NCBI GenBank assembly: GCA_002269645.1 | Contig: NIVC01003869.1 | Coordinates: 8,810 to 72,809 of the forward strand | Length of the DNA stretch: 64,000 bases | Direction: 5' to 3' | Origin: Macrostomum lignano | Taxonomy: Eukaryota | Shown: positions 1-64,000 of the stretch, in pieces | Layout of the letters: every line of letters begins with the position of its first letter | Position numbering within the stretch: position 1 is the first letter of the stretch | Notes under the pieces: model-generated | The model's database searches: none | Told to the model about the DNA's origin: nothing | The model's input: only the letters and a program-made list of their open reading frames with translations | Made by a program: the position numbers and the translations under genes

Positions 1-1303
1 GCCCACCAAGAGAGGGGCGCCCACCAAGGGACAGTGGCGTCTACCAAGAGACAGTGGCTTCTACCAAGAGACAGTGGCTTCTACCAAGAGACAGTGGCGT
101 CTACCAAGAGACAGGGGTGCCCACCAAGAGAGGGGCGCCCACCAAGGGACAGTGGCTTCTACCAAGAGATAGTGGCTTCTATCAACAGACATTGGCTTCT
201 ACCAAGAGACAGTGGCGTCTACCAAGAGACAGTGGCGTCTACCAAGAGACAGTGGCTTCTACCAAGAGACAGTGGCTTCTACCAAGAGACAGTGGCGTCT
301 ACCAAGAGACAGGGGTGCCCACCAAGAGACAGGGGCGCCCACCAAGAGACAGAGGCGCCCACCAAGAGAGGGGCGCCCACCAGAGACAGTGGCTTCTACC
401 AAGAGACAGTGGCTTCTACCAAGAGACAGTGGCTCCTACCAAGAGACAGTGGCTTCTACCAAGAGACAGTGGCTTCTACCAAGAGACAGTGGCTTCTACC
501 AAGAGACAGTGGCGTCTACCAAGAGACAGGGGTGCCCACCAAGAGAGGGGCGCCCACCAAGGGACAGTGGCTTCTACCAAGAGATAGTGGCTTCTATCAA
601 CAGACATTGGCTTCTACCAACAGACAGTGGCTTCTACCAACAGACAGTGGCTTCTACCAAGGGACAGTGGCTTCTACCAAGAGATAGTGGCTTCTATCAA
701 CAGACATTGGCTTCTACCAAGAGACAGTGGCGTCTACCAAGAGACAGTGGCGTCTACCAAGAGACAGTGGCTTCTACCAAGAGACAGTGGCTTCTACCAA
801 GAGACAGTGGCGTCTACCAAGAGACAGGGGTGCCCACCAAGAGAGGGGCGCCCACCAAGGGACAGTGGCTTCTACCAAGAGATAGTGGCTTCTATCAACA
901 GACATTGGCTTCTACCAAGAGACAGTGGCGTCTACCAAGAGACAGTGGCGTCTACCAAGAGACAGTGGCTTCTACCAAGAGACAGTGGCTTCTACCAAGA
1001 GACAGTGGCTTCTACCAAGAGACAGTGGCGTCTACCAAGAGACAGGGGTGCCCACCAAGAGACAGGGGCGCCCACCAAGAGACAGAGGCGCCCACCAAGA
1101 GAGGGGCGCCCACCAGAGATAGTGGCTTCTACCAAGAGATAGTGGCTTCTACCAAGAGATAGTGGCTCCTACCAAGAGACAGTGGCTTCTACCAAGAGAT
1201 AGTGGCTCCTACCAAGAGACAGTGGCTTCTACCAAGAGACAGTGGCTCCTACCAAGAGACAGTGGCTTCTACCAAGAGACAGTGGCTCCTACCAAGAGAC
1301 AGG
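1..1303 (+). repeat. 20-bp minisatellite (CTACCAAGAGACAGTGGCTT with GGCGT/GGGGCGCC variants), in a CLASP intron; runs off the window start
   Basis: Directly visible tandem units; the ORFs at 34-1162 are repeat translations. Confidence 0.95.
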
Positions 1304-2710: not shown

Positions 2711-2766
2711 GTTACTGCCACCTTTTGATCCGGCAATGTGCTGTTTTCATCCCACAAATCCTTCAG

Positions 2767-3297
2767 AGCGACATTCGAGCCTGCGCTCTGTCCGCCCTGC
2801 AAGAGCTGCTCCGAGCCGAGTCGGCCAGATTCGTTGACTTTGTCGAGGTCACCGTATTGAAGGTGCTGGAAGCGCACAGAGATCAGGACCGGTCTGTAGC
2901 CAAAGCCGCGGACGATTGCGCCAAAGCTCTGTCTGCCTGCCTGCCAGCTGATCAGATTCTCCGAGTCCTCATTCCCATTGTGCTGGACTCTGAGGTGCCA
3001 ATCACTTTGGCGGCAATCAAGATGGAGATGCGAGTAGTTCAAGAGGCTGACTCTGGTCTGCTCGAACGCCTGCTAGCGGAGCTCTGCCCCGGCCTGGTCA
3101 GGGCCTGCGAGCATCAGGAGTCGCCGATACGAAAGGCGGCGATATTCTGCTTAGTACAGGTGCAGCTCAAGGTTGGCGACTCCCTGATGCTGCATCTGGG
3201 CGATATGAGCGGCACCAAGCGGCGTCTGTTGCAGCTGTACATCTGCCGGGCCAGGGCGCCCCAGCAGCAGCAGCAGCAGCAACTGACCGCCTTCTAA
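2767..3297 (+). CDS. CLASP: CLASP, last coding exon (C-terminal CLIP-binding/TOG-like domain)
   Basis: Phase-0 join after ttcag (2766). SDIRACAL...VLKVLEAHRD...LAAIKM...ESPIRKAAIFCLV...GTKRRLLQLYICRA matches the CLASP C-terminus (IRALAL...KTLEAHKD...LAAIKM...ESSVRKASVFCLV...GSKMKLLNLYIKRA). Stop TAA at 3295-3297. Confidence 0.93.
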   Translation, partial: SDIRACALSALQELLRAESARFVDFVEVTVLKVLEAHRDQDRSVAKAADDCAKALSACLPADQILRVLIPIVLDSEVPITLAAIKMEMRVVQEADSGLLERLLAELCPGLVRACEHQESPIRKAAIFCLVQVQLKVGDSLMLHLGDMSGTKRRLLQLYICRARAPQQQQQQQLTAF

Positions 3298-8834: not shown

Positions 8835-52872
<44,038 letters not shown>

Positions 52873-53510: not shown

Positions 53511-53659
53511 CCGAGCAATTATTGTACTAATAATGCAACTAGTGACAGGTAGCTGCTGTCTGTCTCAGCCACATTCATTTATGCTTTAGAGAGTGCACAT
53601 GCCTGACGATTAGAAAGAATCAGGACCGTTGTACACCCTGTGTGAGCGTGTGTATGAGT

Positions 53660-54103
53660 GTGTGCCTTCCTGTTATACAACGCCGAGACCTGGACGCTGA
53701 CAGACTCGCTCGAGGCTCAAGTCGACGCGGCGCACGCTGGCCTGCTGCGCGCCGCCTTCAAGATCGGCAACGAGCGAGTCACCAACACGGCGCTCTATCA
53801 TCGCGCCGCCCTGGCCCGTCCTAGCGATCTGCTGCGCCGTCGGCGACTCCAGCTGGCAGGCCACGTCATCCGCGCCGAGGCCTACTGTCCGGAGCCGGTG
53901 CAGGAGGTGCTGCTACTTACGTTGCAGGCACCCTACCGGCGGGGACAGGCGAGGACTCGGCGCTACGTCGACTGTCTGCTGGCTGACGCCGGCGCCCCGG
54001 ACTCTGCCGGCGGTGCAGCGTTTGTTCGCGCCCAAGCTTCGAAGCGCGCCATCTGACGCTGCTTTTGCGAACTGACAGCGTACTCTGTTGTTGTTGTTGT
54101 TGT
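53660..54103 (+). mobile_element. 5'-truncated non-LTR retrotransposon (RTE-like LINE), 3' end
   Basis: LLYNAETWTL...LLRAAFKI...RVTN...LRRRRLQLAGHVIR is the typical post-RT region; a (TTG)n tail follows at ~54085-54103. Confidence 0.8.
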
Positions 54104-54333: not shown

Positions 54334-54801
54334 CAAGGACTACTAAAGTAGATGTTAATGAGGCTGGTTTTCGCCGAAAAATACACTACGGAGATAGGAA
54401 GTTTTCATTTTTTCAACACAAAAATTGCTATTGCTTTTGATAGGAGGCAAACATAGAATCTGAACGAAAAGATTCTACGTATGTTCACCTTTGAATTACA
54501 TGTTGCGCCTTTCTTATTGCTCTATTGATATTTATAAATCTTTTCGTTCAGAAAATTAGGATTCTATGTTTGCTTTTTAACGATTTTAGGTAAATGAAAT
54601 GTATGTTAGAATAAAAAATTGACATGGAGTTCTAATATTCTAAACGAAAAGATTATAAAAATCAATAGAGCTAAAAAATGCACAACATATCAAAAGATGA
54701 ACACTGGGTCTCCCCTCTATCAAAAGCAATAACAATCTTTGTGTTGAAAAAATGAAAACTTGCTATCTCCGCAGTGTATTTTTTCTTTAGGTAGTCCTTT
54801 G
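54334..54801. mobile_element. Foldback MITE (CAAGGACTAC TIR family) with ~190-bp internal inverted arms
   Basis: Ends CAAGGACTAC and GTAGTCCTTTG; arm 54376-54570 is the reverse complement of 54625-54785; flanks GTACTAGG and GTACTAAT. Confidence 0.75.
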
Positions 54802-56789: not shown

Positions 56790-57043
56790 ACACCAAGAGA
56801 CAGGGGGCGCCTACCAAGAGACAGGGGCGCCTACCAAGAGACAGGGGCGCCTACCAAGAGACAGGGGCGCCTACCAAGAGACAGGGGCGCCTACCAAGAG
56901 ACAGGGGCGCCTACCAAGAGACAGGGGCGCCTACCAAGAGACAGGGGCGCCAACCAAGAGACAGGGGCGCCTACCAAGAGAGAGGGGCGCCTACCAAGAG
57001 ACAGGGGCGCCTACCAAGAGACAGGGGCGCCAACCAAGAGACC
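56790..57043 (+). repeat. 20-bp minisatellite (CCAAGAGACAGGGGCGCCTA), same family as 1-1303
   Basis: About 12 units. Confidence 0.93.
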
Positions 57044-57510: not shown

Positions 57511-58194
57511 CTATAGATGCATTTATACAGGCATATAGACATATAGACATCTATAGACATTTCATTGCAAATGGTTTCTGTAGAAGACAGACACATTGCC
57601 TAAAAGCGGCATCCACGCAGACAAAGCGTCCTTTCTGTCAGTATGCTCTAGACAAAAAATGAATCAACATTCTATAAATAAAATTTTAATTTCAATAGAC
57701 ACTCTCGCATGACTTAATCATTATCGTCGGTGCATGAACAACTATGGAATAAAAATACTCGGAATTACTGCGTATTCATTGCTGCAGTGTGCTCTCGAAA
57801 AATCTAATTTTTCTAACGTGGATTTTTTTTCACTCAGTTTGTCTGAGTTTCTCAGAATCCCACATAAATGCAATGACGATACGGAAAATACGCGTTCATC
57901 AACGGCGTCCGGGTCTTTTCTAAGAAAACTCGAGTTGTAGCGCAACCTTCTGCTTCAGTTGCATCATAAATGTAACATAGAACATCTGTGATTTCACTGC
58001 GCTTCGATCCAATTTCTCTTAATTTTAAAAGATGAAAATCAATTTTGGAAACGAAAAATTCTATAGAAGTCGCGATTAAATCCGTTGAAAAACACTTAAA
58101 AATCACAAATATCTGAAAGCACTTTTTCAAAGCAAGTGGAGGTGAGTCTAAATGCAAAATAAAAGAATAATCAAATTTATCGGAAAAACGCCCA

Positions 58195-58407
58195 CCTGCC
58201 GACCCACCAACGCGCTCTGGCGCTATTGGCTAAGCTTACTCGAATTGTCTATAAATACACACTTTTAAAAGCTTGACAGTATTCGCTTACACAATATCCA
58301 AATAAACATCGCTTTTTGAAAAAAACCCTACCGGTAAGTTACAAACCGTTATTAGTAGCCGTATGGGTTTGCCGTTACATTTTACAGGTACGTTTCACCT
58401 GTTTCAG
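58195..58407 (+). promoter_or_regulatory. Promoter and 5'UTR intron of peptide gene copy 1
   Basis: CCCACCAACGCGCTCTGGCG-ATTGGCTAAG module, TATAAATA at 58250-58257, intron 58334-58407 (gtaagt...tttcag). Confidence 0.75.
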
Positions 58408-58419
58408 ACTCTGGTCACC

Positions 58420-58776
58420 ATGAGAGCAGCAGCTGGTCCCATTGTCCTGCTCGTTCTCCTGTCGGCCATCTGTTATCAAGCCGTGAACGCTCGGCCTTTC
58501 AAGTCGCCATCGAACCGACACATTTTCGAGACCGACGACCAAGCAGAGCTCGTTCAGCTGATGCGTCGACTGCTCATCGAGGAGAAGATGATCCAGCGTG
58601 AGCAGCAGCAGCAGAGGCAGTTCGAGGAGCACTTCGATCCATCTAAAAATCGTCCCTGGAACGCCGCCGAGAATCCAGCTGGCTTCCTGGTGGTGCCGAC
58701 ACCGCCAGGCCCGATTGTGGAGCGTCGCTTCAAGCCGAGCGTCACCCCGTGTCTGCTGAAGTTTTGCACCTGGTAA
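58420..58776 (+). CDS. Secreted cyclic-peptide precursor, copy 1 (118 aa); predicted mature peptide FKPSVTPCLLKFCTW
   Basis: Signal peptide MRAAAGPIVLLVLLSAICYQAVNA, acidic/Gln-rich pro-region, RR cleavage site, C-terminal C-x4-C; ATG context CACCATGA; AATAAA near 58873. Confidence 0.85.
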   Translation: MRAAAGPIVLLVLLSAICYQAVNARPFKSPSNRHIFETDDQAELVQLMRRLLIEEKMIQREQQQQRQFEEHFDPSKNRPWNAAENPAGFLVVPTPPGPIVERRFKPSVTPCLLKFCTW

Positions 58777-59219
58777 ACTTGGATCGGCGGAGAGCTCACG
58801 TCGATATTTTCTCTTTGAATCAATCGATCCTAAAATTATGCGATTAGCTGAATTTCCCAAACAAATGAGGGCAATAAATAAAAAATTCCGCCAGCTTTTG
58901 TTCGAAAATCCTATATTTTAATGTCTTTCGCGGCAACACTTCATCGGTTTTACGTTTGACGATTTAAAATAATAAATTTAATACAGCTTGAGAGACTTTG
59001 AAGCTCATATGCATTTTCTCGCTGAATTCTAGAGACTGCATGCGAGATGCAAAAAGTTGTTTGATTTAAATTATTTTTTACTCAGTTCTTCACTGTACAA
59101 ACTGCATGGTTCACTGCAAATAGCCCTGCATGTACAGCTAGCTGGCTCATGTACCGAAGGCTACTCAAGTAGAAGGACGGGAACTATGCGTTTCTTGGAA
59201 AATTTTAGGAGACAGGTTT

Positions 59220-59390
59220 TAGGAGACATGTAAAAAATACATTACAAAAGATAGGAAGTTCTCATTTTTCAGCACAAAAATTGTTATTGCTTTTAATAGA
59301 GGAGAGATCCAGTGTTCCTATTTCGATATGTCCTGCCTTTCTTATTGCTCTATTGACATTCAGAAAGCTTTCTGTTTAGAAAATTACGAA
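59220..59390. mobile_element. Partial copy of the 54334-54801 MITE arm
   Basis: ATAGGAAGTTCTCATTTTTCAGCACAAAAATTGTTATTGC... Confidence 0.55.
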
Positions 59391-60894
59391 CCTCGAGTTA
59401 CCGCCTAGACAAAGAGAGGCCTTTCTCGCTAATCGTTATTTCAAATAGTCTGACTTAAAAGCATGTTGCTGAGCAAACAACCGGCAATCTAAAACTACAG
59501 ACAAAACCAGACGCAATGAGTGCAGTTTACGGAATGATCACCTTCAGCTTTACTTTAGCTTTGATTTTAACCCCTAACAATGTCAGAAGTTAAGGTGTCA
59601 GTACCACTCCAGTTTGCGGATGAGGCTTCATTAATTAAGGGAAGCATAACTTGATACTTGTTTTACTATCGGCCCAGTCATCGATCGCAGACTCGACTTC
59701 CCCAAGCGTCCAGGAAACGTCGCCTCCTACTGTCGCATGAGTTGCCGATGCCAATTCTTCTAGGACCTAGCCTTGCAGGGGTCCCCAACCTGAGGTCCAC
59801 AGGCCATTTCTGTGTGGCCCGAAGCCCTCTTTCCAATTTTTTCATTGCATGCAGCCCGCCGAGTCGCCTGTATTCTTTGTGATGCGGATATATGGCATTT
59901 AAGCCTGCGAATGACTATCCGCTCGTCGGCCAATTGAAGGCGAACGTGCAGGCTAAAAATAGACGCGAAGCATGGTTTTCCTTGATAAGAAGCGCACCAG
60001 TCATCTCCCTAAATTTGCATCGACTTTGAGAAACAGACATTTTTAATTTTTGTGTACTTTTTGTGGCCCGCGTATCGTATCCAATGTCTACCACTGAGTC
60101 CTAGCCAATCGGTCATCAAGACTTTCGAGACAACCAGGAGGTGCTCAGAACAGTACAGAACACTGATGTCGGTTTTAGGGGTGCCACGTCGTGCTAAGCA
60201 CCAAGCTCCAAATTGAGCAACCGTAAATTAGCCGGAATCGCCTCTTCGATGAGTCTCTGAACTTCCCAGAAAATATCCCTCCACAGCAAGTCAGTCCACA
60301 GCCAAGGACACCACAAGACTGACTCTAAAACCACGCCTTGAAAAACCGCCCGCCAACAGGATGATCTACCGTTCAGCACATCGCTCATGATTGATCAAAT
60401 AAATATTTTACCCACTCTGCAAATGCTCGCGGTGCGCGGTTTACATGTACAGATATAGACGACACGTACCTGCAACCTAGAAAAACTGTCAAGAGACCAC
60501 ACATTGTGGACAAGCCCGCGCAGACGTACACTCGACCTCTCAATGGCCTCTGCTGAATGGCACCCAGATTCTTAAATACAATAGTTGTCCTTCTTCGGGC
60601 CAGTGCGATTCAGATATATGGACCTACAGAAACTTCAGTGAGGCATCTGAAGCTCATATGAACCGGACTAGACAGACAGAAAAGCATCGAATTACTGCAT
60701 CGTCGACTTATGTAGTACCAACTACAATTAAATGCATCGATATCATGCTTTCTCTTAATTTTTCCATTTCCAAGCTAATAAAAATGTAGGCAATGAGAAA
60801 AATCATGTCGCTAAAAATCCAATTAACAAGCACTTATAAATCAATTAGCTACCATTCGACTAGATCTCAAAGAAAGATAATTTTTCTGGAAAAC

Positions 60895-61123
60895 GCCCAC
60901 CTGCCAGTCCACCAACGCGCTCTGGCGCCATTGGCTAAGCTAATTGTCTATAAATACAACTGTTTTACGAGCTTGCAAAATTGCTAGCACAATATCCAAT
61001 TTCCAGACTAGCACCCTTCTTGAAAAACCCAATCGGTAAGTTACGAACAGTTACTGCTGCAACTGCCAGTAGCCGTATGTGTTTCTCATGTCGTTCTGAA
61101 TCGGTACGTTTCACCTGTTTCAG
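60895..61123 (+). promoter_or_regulatory. Promoter and 5'UTR intron of peptide gene copy 2
   Basis: Same module; TATAAATA at 60949-60956; intron 61036-61123. Confidence 0.75.
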
Positions 61124-61135
61124 ACTCTGGTCACC

Positions 61136-61492
61136 ATGAGAGCAGCAGCTGGTCCCATTGTCCTGCTCGTTCTCCTGTCGGCCATCTGTTATCAAGCCGT
61201 GAACGCTCGACCTTTCAAGTCGCCATCGAACCGATACATTTTCGAGACCGACGACCAAGCAGAGCTCGTTCAGCTGATGCGTCGACTGCTCATCGAGGAG
61301 AAGATGATCCAGCGTGAGCAGCAGCAGCAGAGGCAGTTCGAGGAGCACTTCGATACATCTAAAAATCGTCCCTGGAACGCCGCCGAGAATCCAGCTGATT
61401 TTCCAATGGCACCAACACCGCCAGGTCCGATTGTGGAGCGTCGCTTCAAGCCGAGCGTCACCCCGTGTCTGCTGAAGTTTTGCACCTATTAA
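61136..61492 (+). CDS. Secreted cyclic-peptide precursor, copy 2 (118 aa); predicted mature peptide FKPSVTPCLLKFCTY
   Basis: Near-identical paralog of copy 1; AATAAA near 61632. Confidence 0.87.
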   Translation: MRAAAGPIVLLVLLSAICYQAVNARPFKSPSNRYIFETDDQAELVQLMRRLLIEEKMIQREQQQQRQFEEHFDTSKNRPWNAAENPADFPMAPTPPGPIVERRFKPSVTPCLLKFCTY

Positions 61493-63064
61493 GCTTGGAG
61501 CCTCCGAAAGCTCAGAAAGATCGGGCACTCGAAGTGAAGTCTAACAAACTTATCTTAGCTAGTGCTGAACCCACCTGTCTTTTAATTTCAACTAATTGAT
61601 CATAAAGTTATAGAGTCGAATGTCCCCGCTCAATAAAAAAATCGTGCAAATTTTCTTTCCAGAAATCCCCTATTTTGAACAAGCCTTTTGTGGCCAAGTT
61701 TTATCGATCTTATCGGTAATGGCTTCAAATAAATCCTTTATTACATCTTGGGACAGAAAAACTCTTGGTAGCATATTGTCTCTCTTAATTCGCTCGTAGC
61801 GAGATCGCAAACAGTGGTTTGATATTTTTTCATTTTTTGACTTAATTCTCTATCGTATAGACTAGATGTAGCTCAGAATTTTGCATTTCAATGCATTTAG
61901 ACTGTACGTATCGAGCCATAGTAGATGTACATGTGCTGGCACCCTGAATATGCAGCGCTTTGCTGACAATCGATTAACTATAATTTTAACCACTCTGGTG
62001 ATGATGCACATGTATGCATGAGTATGAGTAATTGCGGCCTTGAACCATCCAAAGACAAGAAAACACAAATTCACCGGTTGGATGTTTCTGCTCTCAGGCG
62101 CGCCCCAGGGTCGCCGATTTTTCCAAGTCAGTAGTTATCACGGCGCTCAGCCTTTAAGTATCCCATCGGTGACACCTGGCATGGATACTATTTAACAGTC
62201 CAACTTTAGCATTATATTTTTCTCTAATCGATCACAAACATAGACAGATTATACCTACCTACCGACAAACATTTTTTAGCATAATTTTATACGTTAGTCC
62301 CCATGAACATGTAAAAAGCCAAGTCTGGCTTCTGTGGAATAAAGGTGTTTAAAGCAGCAAGCATGTACTCCCATCCTGATATCAATCTTGATAGCTTATT
62401 AAATTTCCCTCGTGTGTCATGGCCGAGCCGAGAATTGAATCGCCGTCGTTCTAATCTAACATTGGGCCTTCAAAACGTCCAGATTCCAGAGATTTACAAG
62501 GAATAATCCCATCGAGCGCGCTTGCGATTCTATCAAGACGGTGTGAATCCAGCGACATATTCCGTCACAGTATGCACTTGTGGAACCCGACGCAGGCAGT
62601 CGCTTAAATTGTGTACGACAGTATCTGATTGGCCCCTCTACGAGTAGTCGGTTGTCGTCTTGGTATGGACTTGAAAAACCACATAGAAGCGATAAAAATT
62701 GGTAACTAACTAATAATAATGACGATAATTCCATTGCGCATTATGTAATTGAAAAAAACATTTTATTTAAATTTTACTATTTTACCAATTTAATTTTAAA
62801 TTTTACCAATTTTACTATAGTAAATTAAAAAATGACGACCATCAATTGACTTAATTGACTTACAAAGTTCAGAGCGACAGATGCGTCGATTTGATGCTTT
62901 CTCTTAGTTTTTTTCAAGCTGATAAAAAATTAAATAACGAAAAAATGAAATGGCTCGATAATCAGTGTAAAAGCTGTTGAAAATTTTCAATTATCTGTCC
63001 ATCAGTTAATAAAAAAGTGGAAAGTCTGTGGCTAAAAAATAATTTATCAGGACAACGCCTACTT

Positions 63065-63282
63065 GCCGCCGGCCCACCAACGCGCTCTGGCGCCATTGGC
63101 TAAGCTTATTGTCTATAAATACAGTTGTTTTAGGCGCTTAACAAATTCGCCTACACAATTTTCTGATTAACACGCACTTCTTAAAGAACCCAATCGGTAA
63201 GTTACGAACCGTTATTACTGCAACTGCCAGTAGCCGTATGGGTTTGCCGTGACATTTTACAGGTACGTTTCACCTGTTTCAG
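63065..63282 (+). promoter_or_regulatory. Promoter and 5'UTR intron of peptide gene copy 3
   Basis: Same module; TATAAATA at 63114-63121; intron 63197-63282. Confidence 0.75.
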
Positions 63283-63294
63283 ACTCTGGTCACC

Positions 63295-63656
63295 ATGAGA
63301 GCAGCAGCTGGTCCCATTGTCCTGCTCGTTCTCCTGTCGTCCATCTGTTATCAAGCCGTGAACGCTCGGCCTTTCAAGTCGCCATCGAACCGATACATTT
63401 TCGAGACGACGACCAAGCAGAGCTCGTTCAGCTGATGCGTCGACTGCTCATCGAGGAGAAGATGCTCCAGCGTGAGCAGCAGCAGCAGAGGCAGTTCGAG
63501 GAGCACTTCGATCCATCTAAAAATCGTCCCTGGAACGCCGCCGAGAATCCAGCTGGTTTTCCAATGGCACCAACACCGCCAGGTCCGATTGTGGAGCGTC
63601 GCTCCAAGCCGAGCGTCACCCCGTGTCTGAGTAAGTTCTGCACCTGGTCAACTTAA
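63295..63656 (+). pseudogene. Peptide precursor copy 3, with a 1-bp deletion near 63407 (pseudogene or assembly error); C-terminus SKPSVTPCLSKFCTWST
   Basis: GAGACGACG versus GAGACCGACG in copies 1 and 2; the downstream paralogous frame is intact to TAA at 63656. Confidence 0.7.
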
Positions 63657-64000
63657 AGCCGCGAATAGAGAGAGCGAGAGATCGAGGATAGCGACAGATT
63701 GGGCAATCGCAGTGAAATCTAACACACTTTAATAACTACAAGCAAGAAATTGCGTTTTGATTTAATGAAGTTTAACCTGTCTGTCTTTTGATTTTTTTTG
63801 GACTGAACGAATCGATCCTGAAATCTCCGGTTAGCTGCATGTTCCACTGGACTGCGAGAACAATAAACTAAATCCAATAAATCAAGTTTTGGTTTGAAAG
63901 TTCTCTTTGTAATAGTTATGTCTTTGTCTTATTACGAGTGCTGCCCAAAATACGTCCAAACAGTGTATTTGAAATCGTGTCTAGAACTTATTTTTATTGC

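What the first reader, a model, noticed from the sequence alone, without database searches (positions are those of the whole stretch)
58420..63656. Tandem three-gene cluster of secreted precursors for a urotensin-II-sized cyclic peptide
Seen: three paralogs, each with a signal peptide, a pro-region, a dibasic RR site, then a 15-17-aa C-terminal peptide with exactly two Cys four residues apart (FKPSVTP-CLLKFC-TW/TY). Known: vertebrate urotensin II has a six-residue disulfide ring, CFWKYC (human ETPDCFWKYCV), released from the precursor C-terminus; the same ring size with K and an aromatic residue in the last two ring positions occurs here, and a CxWKxC-type UII-like peptide has been reported in Aplysia. 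Inference: a lineage-specific UII/somatostatin-superfamily-like neuropeptide lacking the ring Trp, or a convergent pheromone, seminal or toxin peptide. I do not recognise it as a described flatworm peptide.
Basis: partly seen in the sequence, partly recalled or inferred. Interest (0 to 1): 0.82.

Follow-up and report, generated by a model that had tools for sequence, protein, structure and literature searches.

The report
Flatworm cyclic-peptide precursor gene cluster
Three tandem genes of the flatworm Macrostomum lignano (two intact, one broken) encode small secreted precursors whose last 15 residues should be cut off as a disulfide-closed peptide; it has the ring size of urotensin II, but kinship with that hormone family could not be shown.

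Summary
Two intact 118-aa ORFs (58420-58776, 61136-61492) and a third copy (63295-63656) carrying a 1-nt deletion lie in tandem on the + strand. Each has a CCAAT/TATA promoter core, a GT-AG intron in the 5' UTR and an AATAAA signal downstream.

Only the stretch from promoter core to stop codon is conserved: the CDS is 95-96% identical, while the 3' flanks are no more alike than shuffled sequence. pN/pS is 0.35 in the sense frame. These are maintained genes.

The product has a signal peptide (cleavage after Ala24), a helical acidic pro-region, and RR102-103 in a disordered Pro-rich stretch. It ends in FKPSVTP-CLLKFC-TW/TY, which holds the only two Cys of the mature protein.

The organism is Macrostomum lignano. 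No homologue turned up in Pfam, two very large protein libraries, metagenome contigs or the literature.

The closest known kind is the protostome SSRP-like/urotensin-II peptides (Aplysia CLWKVC, Capitella CIWKVC...PW-OH). Shared: ring size, Leu2, Lys4, a free aromatic C-terminus and the precursor layout. Not met: the defining Trp, the pro-region intron and profile similarity (an independent HMM scores it at noise).

Verdict: a lineage-restricted prohormone-like gene family. Urotensin-II kinship is unproven, and the tissue and target are unknown.

The parts
58184..58257 (+). Copy 1 promoter core: conserved block CCACCAACGCGCTCTGGCGC (58204), inverted CCAAT box ATTGGCT (58225), TATAAATA (58250)
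   Evidence: 82-88% identical between copies while sequence further upstream is at shuffle level. Promoter function is inferred from the motifs.
58334..58407 (+). Copy 1 5'-UTR intron (GGTAAGTTAC...TTTCAG), ending 12 nt before the ATG. The untranslated exon 1 lies roughly at 58280-58333 (inferred).
   Evidence: Donor and acceptor motifs are conserved in all three copies; the last 30 nt of the intron are identical.
58420..58776 (+). Copy 1 CDS, 118 aa. Signal peptide 58420-58491; pro-region 58492-58722; RR 58723-58728; peptide FKPSVTPCLLKFCTW 58729-58773; stop 58774-58776
58873..58878 (+). Copy 1 AATAAA poly(A) signal, 97 nt after the stop codon
60889..60956 (+). Copy 2 promoter core (conserved block 60909, inverted CCAAT 60930, TATA 60949)
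61036..61123 (+). Copy 2 5'-UTR intron
61136..61492 (+). Copy 2 CDS, 118 aa. Signal peptide 61136-61207; RR 61439-61444; peptide FKPSVTPCLLKFCTY 61445-61489; stop 61490-61492
   Evidence: AlphaFold2 model
61632..61637 (+). Copy 2 AATAAA poly(A) signal, 140 nt after the stop codon
63054..63121 (+). Copy 3 promoter core (conserved block 63074, inverted CCAAT 63095, TATA 63114)
63197..63282 (+). Copy 3 5'-UTR intron
63295..63656 (+). Copy 3, frameshifted: 1-nt deletion between 63407 and 63408, premature stop at 63433-63435. The downstream frame still reads ...RR (63597-63602) SKPSVTPCLSKFCTWST (63603-63653), stop 63654-63656. Probable pseudogene, or an assembly indel.
   Evidence: pN/pS against copy 2 is about 1.05, and two of its private replacements fall in the peptide.
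63862..63867 (+). Copy 3 AATAAA poly(A) signal, 206 nt after the stop codon

Best explanation
This is a Macrostomum-restricted family of prohormone-type genes. Each is a small transcription unit: CCAAT/TATA promoter, one 5'-UTR intron, an intronless CDS and a short 3' UTR.

Proposed mechanism (every step is inferred; none was observed):
1. The 118-aa product enters the ER, and its signal peptide is removed after Ala24.
2. The only two remaining cysteines, C111 and C116, form an intramolecular disulfide.
3. A subtilisin-like convertase cuts after Arg102-Arg103.
4. This releases a C-terminal, non-amidated 15-mer with a six-residue ring: FKPSVTP-c[CLLKFC]-TW from copy 1 and -TY from copy 2.

The released peptide would be the active, extracellular product. 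The acidic helical pro-region would act as a spacer, or yield a second product if RR49-50 is also cut. I read the likeness to urotensin II and SSRP-like peptides as a likeness of design (how it works), probably convergent or too diverged to prove, and not as demonstrated family membership. The cluster evolves by birth and death, and copy 3 is decaying.
For: Real, maintained genes:
- The CDS is 95-96% identical while the 3' flanks and distal upstream regions are at shuffle level. The promoter core, splice sites and poly(A) signals are conserved.
- pN/pS is 0.35 in the sense frame, against 2.1 in the open antisense frame.
- CDS GC3 is 0.62-0.69, against 0.37-0.44 GC in the flanks.

Secretory layout:
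- Hydrophobic core with mean Kyte-Doolittle hydropathy 3.36, and a VNA|RP cleavage site.
- AlphaFold2 gives helix 7-24, a confident helix 38-76 that contains RR49-50, and a disordered residues 84-118 that contains RR102-103.
- Exactly two Cys remain after signal peptide removal.

Peptide under constraint:
- There are no nucleotide differences between copies 1 and 2 over peptide codons 104-117.
- The frameshifted copy 3 has F104S, L113S and a lost stop codon.

Processing precedent and machinery:
- Aplysia apUII is released by cleavage at a dibasic site directly before F-K (F85KSP...), shown by mass spectrometry.
- M. lignano has a pc2 homologue expressed in the nervous system and essential for development.

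Lineage restriction: no Pfam family, and no hit among 5.8 billion clustered proteins, 1.84 billion representatives, exact-sequence look-ups, metagenome contigs or the paper library.
Against: - There is no expression, peptidomic or receptor evidence of any kind.
- The signal peptide and cleavage sites come from heuristics, not from SignalP or NeuroPred.
- A second RR at residues 49-50 means the RR before the peptide is not a unique signature.
- The libraries searched are rich in prokaryotes and metagenomes and poor in flatworm transcriptomes, so 'no homologue' is weak evidence of restriction.
- Near-identical tandem copies behind strong TATA promoters, with a decaying member, fit abundant gland products as well as neuropeptides.
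- The low synonymous divergence (pS 0.03-0.13) beside saturated flanks implies gene conversion. Gene conversion weakens pN/pS as a measure of constraint.
Confidence: 0.55

Rival explanations
1. It is a true but divergent member of the bilaterian SSRP-like / urotensin-II family, and would be the first from Platyhelminthes. It would be a neuropeptide acting on a somatostatin/UT-clade GPCR, in which the pharmacophore Trp has been replaced by Leu and the introns lost. This refines the best explanation rather than excluding it.
For: [quoted passage not shown]
- An aliphatic residue at ring position 2 and Lys at position 4, as in Aplysia CLWKVC and Capitella CIWKVC.
- Hydrophobic or aromatic residue at ring position 5 (Tyr in UII).
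- 7 residues precede the ring, against 8 in Capitella.
- A free, non-amidated C-terminus ending in Trp, as in Ct-SSRPL1 ...PPTPW-OH.
- The peptide starts F-K directly after the dibasic site, as in apUII.
- A single peptide sits at the end of a ~110-125-aa precursor.
- The best local alignment in hhalign and BLASTP places ring on ring.
- Ring-only similarity has P about 0.01 against background amino-acid frequencies.
- Some annelid family members have lost an intron.
- The family had not been reported from flatworms, so a gap exists to be filled.
Against: - The WK motif shared by all known members is absent.
- Nematode nlp-56, with FK in place of WK, is itself treated as doubtful.
- The phase-0 pro-region intron common to all genes investigated is absent.
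- The tail lacks the usual prolines.
- hhalign probability is 1% with E 0.05, and BLASTP gives E 0.08, each for a single comparison.
- An independent HMM of eight SSRP-like/UII peptides scores the ORFs at -0.2 to -0.5 bits, ranks 771-856 of 2677 six-frame pieces.
- Shuffling the peptide's own residues reaches the observed ring score 6.5% of the time.
- The features listed in favour were chosen after seeing the sequence.
Confidence: 0.2
2. It is a non-neural gland product: a seminal-fluid, adhesive, mucus or defence protein made in bulk by secretory cells. Either the whole ~94-aa protein is the active form, or the cationic cyclic tail acts as a host-defence or partner-manipulating peptide.
For: - Orphan, fast-turnover tandem family with one decaying copy.
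- Strong TATA/CCAAT promoters.
- In M. lignano, 76 prostate-limited transcripts are known; 31 have no BLAST hit, and 38 of 65 have signal peptides. This class is common in the species.
- The peptide is cationic (about +1.7 net at pH 7) and hydrophobic (GRAVY 0.55).
- From general knowledge, not tested here: frog 'Rana box' peptides and bactenecin are host-defence peptides with a small disulfide loop, cut from the C-terminus of an acidic precursor.
Against: - The peptide sequence was absent from the held supplements of the prostate screen, though these probably hold no sequences.
- At 15 residues with only two Lys, it is short and weakly charged for a membrane-active peptide.
- The peptide shows complete nucleotide identity between copies 1 and 2. 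Arms-race proteins usually diversify in the active part, although gene conversion could equally produce this identity.
Confidence: 0.25
3. The ORFs are not functional genes. They would be relics carried by a repeated element, or a dying family kept alike only by gene conversion, without a stable secreted product.
For: - Copy 3 is frameshifted.
- The window is extremely rich in repeats.
- The conserved segment is short, about 570 bp, with unrelated flanks.
- There are no homologues and no annotated protein.
Against: - The conserved segment ends exactly at the stop codon and covers promoter, splice sites and CDS, which a mobile element would not explain.
- No further copies or terminal repeats occur in the window.
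- pN/pS is 0.35 only in the sense frame.
- Two copies keep 118 open codons with a canonical signal peptide.
- Each copy has its own poly(A) signal.
Confidence: 0.05

Closest known systems
Protostome SSRP-like peptides: Aplysia apUII FKSPMQSRSGGMSL-CLWKVC-PAAPWLIS and Capitella Ct-SSRPL1 pQASSGAQI-CIWKVC-PPTPW-OH (Romanova 2012, PMC3493602; Koch 2022, PMC9048919)
   Same: A signal peptide, a pro-region, a dibasic site, and one cyclic peptide at or near the C-terminal end of a precursor of about 110-125 aa. A four-residue Cys loop with an aliphatic residue at ring position 2 and Lys at position 4. A non-amidated end with Trp in the tail. Cleavage directly before F-K, as in apUII.
   Different: The ring Trp of the defining WK motif is Leu. 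There are no Pro in the tail and no Gly/Ser-rich N-extension. The CDS has no introns. Profile similarity is absent. There are three tandem copies. Not known from flatworms.
Vertebrate urotensin II / URP (CFWKYC)
   Same: A six-residue disulfide ring with Lys followed by an aromatic residue in the last two ring positions. The peptide is released from the C-terminus of the precursor after basic residues.
   Different: Ring positions 2-3 are Phe-Trp in UII and Leu-Leu here. The tail and N-extension differ. UII/URP genes have several introns.
Nematode nlp-56 (FK instead of WK; mentioned in Koch 2022)
   Same: A Cys-loop peptide that resembles SSRPs but lacks the Trp, and whose family status is uncertain.
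   Different: I did not see the nlp-56 sequence. It forms a solitary cluster in the published analysis, and no link to the Macrostomum peptide was tested.
Allatostatin-C
   Same: A C-terminal disulfide-looped peptide from a small precursor, and present in spiralians.
   Different: The loop size and motifs differ from those of the SSRP-like family. Koch 2022 found nothing in common between the two families beyond a Cys loop.
Prostate-limited putative seminal fluid proteins of M. lignano (Weber 2018, PMC5977470)
   Same: The same species. Small secreted proteins, many with no homologue.
   Different: No evidence places these genes among the 76 transcripts. A prohormone-like dibasic site followed by a cyclic tail is not a described feature of that set.

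Membership tests
SSRP-like / urotensin II family | Cys loop enclosing four residues | tested here: met
   CLLKFC in copies 1 and 2, CLSKFC in copy 3.
SSRP-like / urotensin II family | WK motif inside the loop (C-x-W-K-x-C), shared by all described members | tested here: not met
   The ring reads L-L-K-F: Lys is present, but Trp is replaced by Leu (definition).
SSRP-like / urotensin II family | Aliphatic (protostome) or aromatic (chordate) residue before the W position | tested here: met
   Leu at ring position 2, as in Aplysia LWK.
SSRP-like / urotensin II family | Secretory precursor with a single peptide near the C-terminus, behind a basic processing site | tested here: met
   Signal peptide heuristics and RR102-103; a disordered context for the site. 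Actual processing was not observed.
SSRP-like / urotensin II family | C-terminal extension with prolines and a single Trp (protostome members) | tested here: inconclusive
   The tail is TW or TY: an aromatic free C-terminus like Ct-SSRPL1 ...PW-OH, but with no Pro and only two residues.
SSRP-like / urotensin II family | Phase-0 intron in the pro-region (all genes investigated); canonical 3-exon structure in molluscs and annelids | tested here: not met
   The CDS is one uninterrupted ORF, and the only intron lies in the 5' UTR. Some annelid genes have lost the second intron.
SSRP-like / urotensin II family | Detectable sequence or profile similarity of the precursor or peptide to family members | tested here: not met
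   hhalign E 0.052, probability 1%. BLASTP E 0.078. An HMM of 8 family peptides gives -0.2 to -0.5 bits, ranks 771-856 of 2677. The whole-library searches returned nothing at all.
SSRP-like / urotensin II family | Activates a GPCR of the SST/UT-related clade; neuronal expression | not testable with these tools
   No access to the M. lignano proteome, its transcriptomes or assays.
Prohormone-type secreted peptide precursor (generic kind) | Signal peptide, spacer, basic cleavage site, short terminal peptide with a stabilising modification | tested here: met
   A convertase (pc2) exists in the species.

The most novel reading that the evidence does not exclude
The cluster encodes the missing platyhelminth branch of the somatostatin/urotensin-II (SSRP-like) signalling system, in a form that has lost the Trp of the otherwise invariant Trp-Lys pharmacophore. 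That would imply a co-evolved receptor pocket in flatworms. It would also show that this family can hide from motif searches based on C.WK.C.
Probability: 0.2. Interest if true: 0.7.

Novelty: new variant of a known kind. Interest (0 to 1): 0.5.

Why it matters
Flatworm peptide signalling is poorly mapped. The published survey of SSRP-like peptides does not mention flatworms. If the 15-mer is made, it is an undescribed bioactive-peptide candidate in a genetically tractable model flatworm. It is cheap to synthesise and has exact predicted masses, so it could be tested directly on receptors, behaviour or reproduction.

If it proves to be a Trp-less relative of urotensin II, it would extend that family to a new phylum and relax its defining motif. 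If it proves to be a gland product, it is an example of a prohormone-style cyclic peptide recruited for external or partner-directed use.

Either way, the locus shows how sharply selection and gene conversion can preserve only the promoter-to-stop segment of old tandem duplicates.

Tried and rejected
- Pfam scan of both intact proteins: only sub-threshold noise.
- Word-indexed search of 5.8 billion proteins at E<=10: nothing.
- Exhaustive phmmer against 1.84 billion representatives: nothing.
- Exact-sequence look-ups for both proteins: not on record.
- Metagenome contig scan: 506 pattern matches, none confirmed.
- Full-text search for CLLKFC, FKPSVTPC, VTPCLLK and LLKFCTW: no paper.
- Supplements of the M. 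lignano prostate screen: no match. Supplements of Koch 2022 are not held. McVeigh 2009 is not held.
Doubling it retrieved six molluscan precursors.
- Reading the gene on the minus strand, where 161- and 187-aa antisense ORFs exist: rejected. pN/pS there is 2.1, their starts lie in unconserved flanks, and all gene signals point to the + strand.
- The upstream in-frame extension of copy 1 from ATG 58363: rejected. It lies in the intron and is absent from copy 2.
- A mobile-element explanation for the short conserved segment: rejected.
- The vasopressin/oxytocin type (also C-x4-C): rejected on layout, from general knowledge. Those peptides sit at the N-terminus and are followed by a neurophysin.
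- The monogenean GPCR paper gave no information on SST/UT-type receptors in flatworms.

Full report
**What is there.** Three paralogous units lie head to tail on the + strand, with ATG codons at 58420, 61136 and 63295. Copies 1 and 2 are uninterrupted 118-codon ORFs, 94% identical in protein. Copy 3 lacks one C between 63407 and 63408. Its ATG frame therefore ends after 46 codons, and the rest of the protein sits in another frame. A tblastn search and a pattern scan of all six frames found no further copy in the window, which ends 344 nt after copy 3.

**Organism.** A neighbouring exon (2764-3294) is identical to Macrostomum lignano UniProt protein A0A1I8FRN9, apart from two short segments missing from that gene model.

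**Gene anatomy.** A three-way DNA alignment shows a sharply bounded conserved segment of about 570 bp. It contains:
- a promoter core, CCACCAACGCGCTCTGGCGCCATTGGCTAAGCT...ATTGTCTATAAATACA, with an inverted CCAAT box and a TATA box;
- a diverged untranslated first exon;
- a 74-88-nt GT-AG intron whose last 30 nt are identical between copies, ending 12 nt before the ATG;
- the CDS.

Similarity stops at the stop codon. Measured identities are 95-96% for the CDS, 82-88% for the promoter core, 71-75% for exon 1 and 69-84% for the intron. The first 340 nt after the stop and the -600 to -300 upstream region score 0.60-0.62, which equals shuffled controls. Only two small blocks of residual homology, 53 and 37 bp, survive in the spacers. 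Each copy has an AATAAA signal 97-206 nt after its stop. CDS GC3 is 0.62-0.69, against 0.37-0.44 GC in the flanks.

I read these as old tandem duplicates whose functional segment is kept alike by purifying selection, probably with gene conversion. The reason is that synonymous divergence (pS 0.03-0.13) is far below the saturated flanks.

**Which strand and frame.** Between copies 1 and 2, pN/pS is 0.35 in the proposed frame. It is 2.1 in the open antisense frame that yields the 161- and 187-aa minus-strand ORFs. The promoter, intron and poly(A) signals all point to the + strand.

**Copy 3.** Against copy 2 it has pN/pS of about 1.05. Its private changes are A16S, the frameshift, I58L, F104S, L113S (three nucleotide changes) and a lost stop codon. 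Copies 1 and 2, by contrast, have no nucleotide difference across peptide codons 104-117. This fits relaxed constraint on copy 3 and constraint on the peptide in the intact copies. A long-read indel error cannot be excluded for the frameshift itself.

**The protein.**
- Residues 1-24 have a basic N-terminal region, a hydrophobic core (IVLLVLLSAI, mean Kyte-Doolittle hydropathy 3.36) and a VNA|RP site that obeys the (-3,-1) rule.
- C18 is removed with the signal peptide, so the secreted protein has exactly two cysteines, C111 and C116.
- A single-sequence AlphaFold2 model (mean pLDDT 69) gives a confident helix at 38-76 (pLDDT above 90) and no structure from residue 84 to the end.
- There are two RR sites. 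RR49-50 lies inside the confident helix. RR102-103 lies in the disordered, Pro-rich stretch directly before the peptide.
- The released peptides would be FKPSVTPCLLKFCTW and ...CTY. Net charge is about +1.7 and GRAVY 0.55. Oxidised [M+H]+ is 1767.896 and 1744.880.
- There is no Gly for amidation, and no basic residues need trimming, because the peptide ends the precursor.

**Feasibility of processing.** In Aplysia apUII, mass spectrometry showed cleavage at a dibasic site directly before F85-K-S-P. M. lignano has a pc2 homologue that is expressed in the nervous system and is essential for development. Processing of this particular precursor remains inferred.

**Relatives.** None was found. Pfam gave only noise. 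A word-indexed search of 5.8 billion clustered proteins found nothing at E<=10. An exhaustive phmmer run over 1.84 billion representatives found nothing at E<=0.001. Exact-sequence look-ups, metagenome contigs and full-text searches for the peptide strings were all empty. These libraries hold the UniProt M. lignano proteome, since the neighbouring gene was found there, but few flatworm transcriptomes. The orphan status is therefore provisional.

**Comparison with urotensin II and SSRP-like peptides.** Aplysia apUII is FKSPMQSRSGGMSL-CLWKVC-PAAPWLIS, with a disulfide verified by mass spectrometry. Koch et al. 2022 define a protostome SSRP-like family. Its members have a four-residue loop, an invariant WK motif preceded by I, V or L, and Pro plus a single Trp in the tail. 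They report it from molluscs, annelids, brachiopods, rotifers and Xenoturbella, and do not mention flatworms. The annelid ligand Ct-SSRPL1 is pQASSGAQI-CIWKVC-PPTPW-OH and activates its receptor at 13 nM.

The Macrostomum peptide shares:
- the loop size;
- Leu at ring position 2 and Lys at position 4;
- a hydrophobic or aromatic residue at ring position 5;
- an N-extension of 7 residues, against 8 in Capitella;
- an F-K start after the dibasic site;
- a free C-terminus ending in Trp;
- the precursor layout.

It differs in:
- lacking the defining Trp;
- lacking Pro in the tail;
- lacking the phase-0 pro-region intron reported for all genes investigated.

**Tests of that link.** I retrieved six molluscan precursors.
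- Profile-profile comparison places ring on ring, but with probability 1% and E 0.052.
- BLASTP against the Nucella precursor aligns ERRFKPSV---TPCLLKFC with QKRQRPSVQSRSGGMSLCLWKVC at E 0.078 for a single comparison.
- A ring-only BLOSUM score is reached by 1% of background-composition rings, but by 6.5% of shuffles of the peptide's own residues.
- The least biased test was an HMM built from eight family peptides without reference to this window. It scored the three ORFs at -0.2 to -0.5 bits, ranks 771-856 among 2677 six-frame pieces of the same window.

The likeness is therefore confined to the Cys spacing plus two or three positions. It is a lead and does not establish homology. Three family features were tested and not met: the WK motif, the pro-region intron and detectable profile similarity. 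I do not file the genes under that family.

**Alternative role.** In M. lignano, 76 prostate-limited transcripts are known. Of these, 31 have no BLAST hit, and 38 of 65 have signal peptides. An orphan tandem cluster behind strong promoters, with a decaying member, fits that class as well. Sequence alone cannot separate a neuronal from a glandular source.

**Verdict.** The secreted, convertase-released cyclic-peptide mechanism is the best-supported reading (about 0.55). True SSRP-like/UII ancestry is possible (about 0.2) but failed the tests I could run. A gland product is a serious rival (about 0.25). Non-function is unlikely (about 0.05).

I rate it a new variant of a known kind and moderately interesting. 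Its value depends on expression and peptidomic checks that are easy to do in this model species.

Noticed in passing
window 29873-52414: A 22.5-kb array of a 42-bp unit (TATAGGATAGGGGAGTTGAGGACCGTAGCTGAAGGACACTAT): 537 copies, 99% matching, with constant GC skew of about +0.5. It creates artefactual ORFs of about 5900 codons on both strands.
   Followed up: no
window 23-1302, 1911-2724, 13703-14454, 15077-16878, 19815-21097, 25389-26192, 27093-27527, 56792-57042: The window is packed with other minisatellites of 8-84-bp units. The 20-bp units at 23-1302 and 56792-57042 share a 12-nt start (ACCAAGAGACAG), although they lie 55 kb apart.
   Followed up: no
window ~13000-14940 and 24843-25187 (+); 19025-19627 (-): Exons of a TRPM-type channel gene (Pfam TRPM2-like domain, E 1e-9 and 3e-17; Ion_trans, E 2e-5). 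Between them, on the opposite strand, lies an exon-like ORF with a weak hit to the amiloride-sensitive sodium channel family (ASC, E 2e-4, below Pfam's cut-off). It may be a gene nested in a TRPM intron.
   Followed up: partly
window 2764-3294 (+): A TOG/CLASP-like exon identical to M. lignano A0A1I8FRN9, except that the UniProt model lacks VPITLAAIK and RLLQ, which are in frame in the genome, and differs at one residue (T versus A) near the C-terminus. The deposited gene model may skip these segments wrongly.
   Followed up: partly
window 58492-58521 and 61208-61237 (residues 25-34 of the precursors): The pro-region begins RPFKSPSNR(H/Y). This echoes the start of the C-terminal peptide (FKPSVTP) and the N-terminus of Aplysia apUII (FKSPMQSR). 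It could be an internal repeat, a second product if RR49-50 is cut, or coincidence.
   Followed up: no
window 58681-58698 versus 61397-61414: Most of the copy 1 versus copy 2/3 differences cluster in six adjacent codons, 88-93 (GFLVVP versus DFPMAP or GFPMAP). The patch looks like a gene-conversion boundary or a locally unconstrained linker.
   Followed up: no
window 63630-63640: The three-nucleotide change CTG to AGT in copy 3 creates GTAAGT, a consensus splice-donor hexamer, inside the peptide-coding part.
   Followed up: no
window 59232-59391; also 54377-54784 (-) and 22479-22622: A dispersed repeat of about 160 bp (70-80% identity) sits in the spacer between copies 1 and 2, with further copies at 54.4-54.8 kb and 22.5 kb. 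It is probably a transposable-element fragment. The ORF at 53658-54056 has no Pfam hit.
   Followed up: no
window 58375-58860 (-) and 60965-61528 (-): Long antisense ORFs (161 and 187 aa) overlap the CDS of copies 1 and 2. Their pN/pS of 2.1 and unconserved starts show they are by-products of the sense-strand codon bias.
   Followed up: yes
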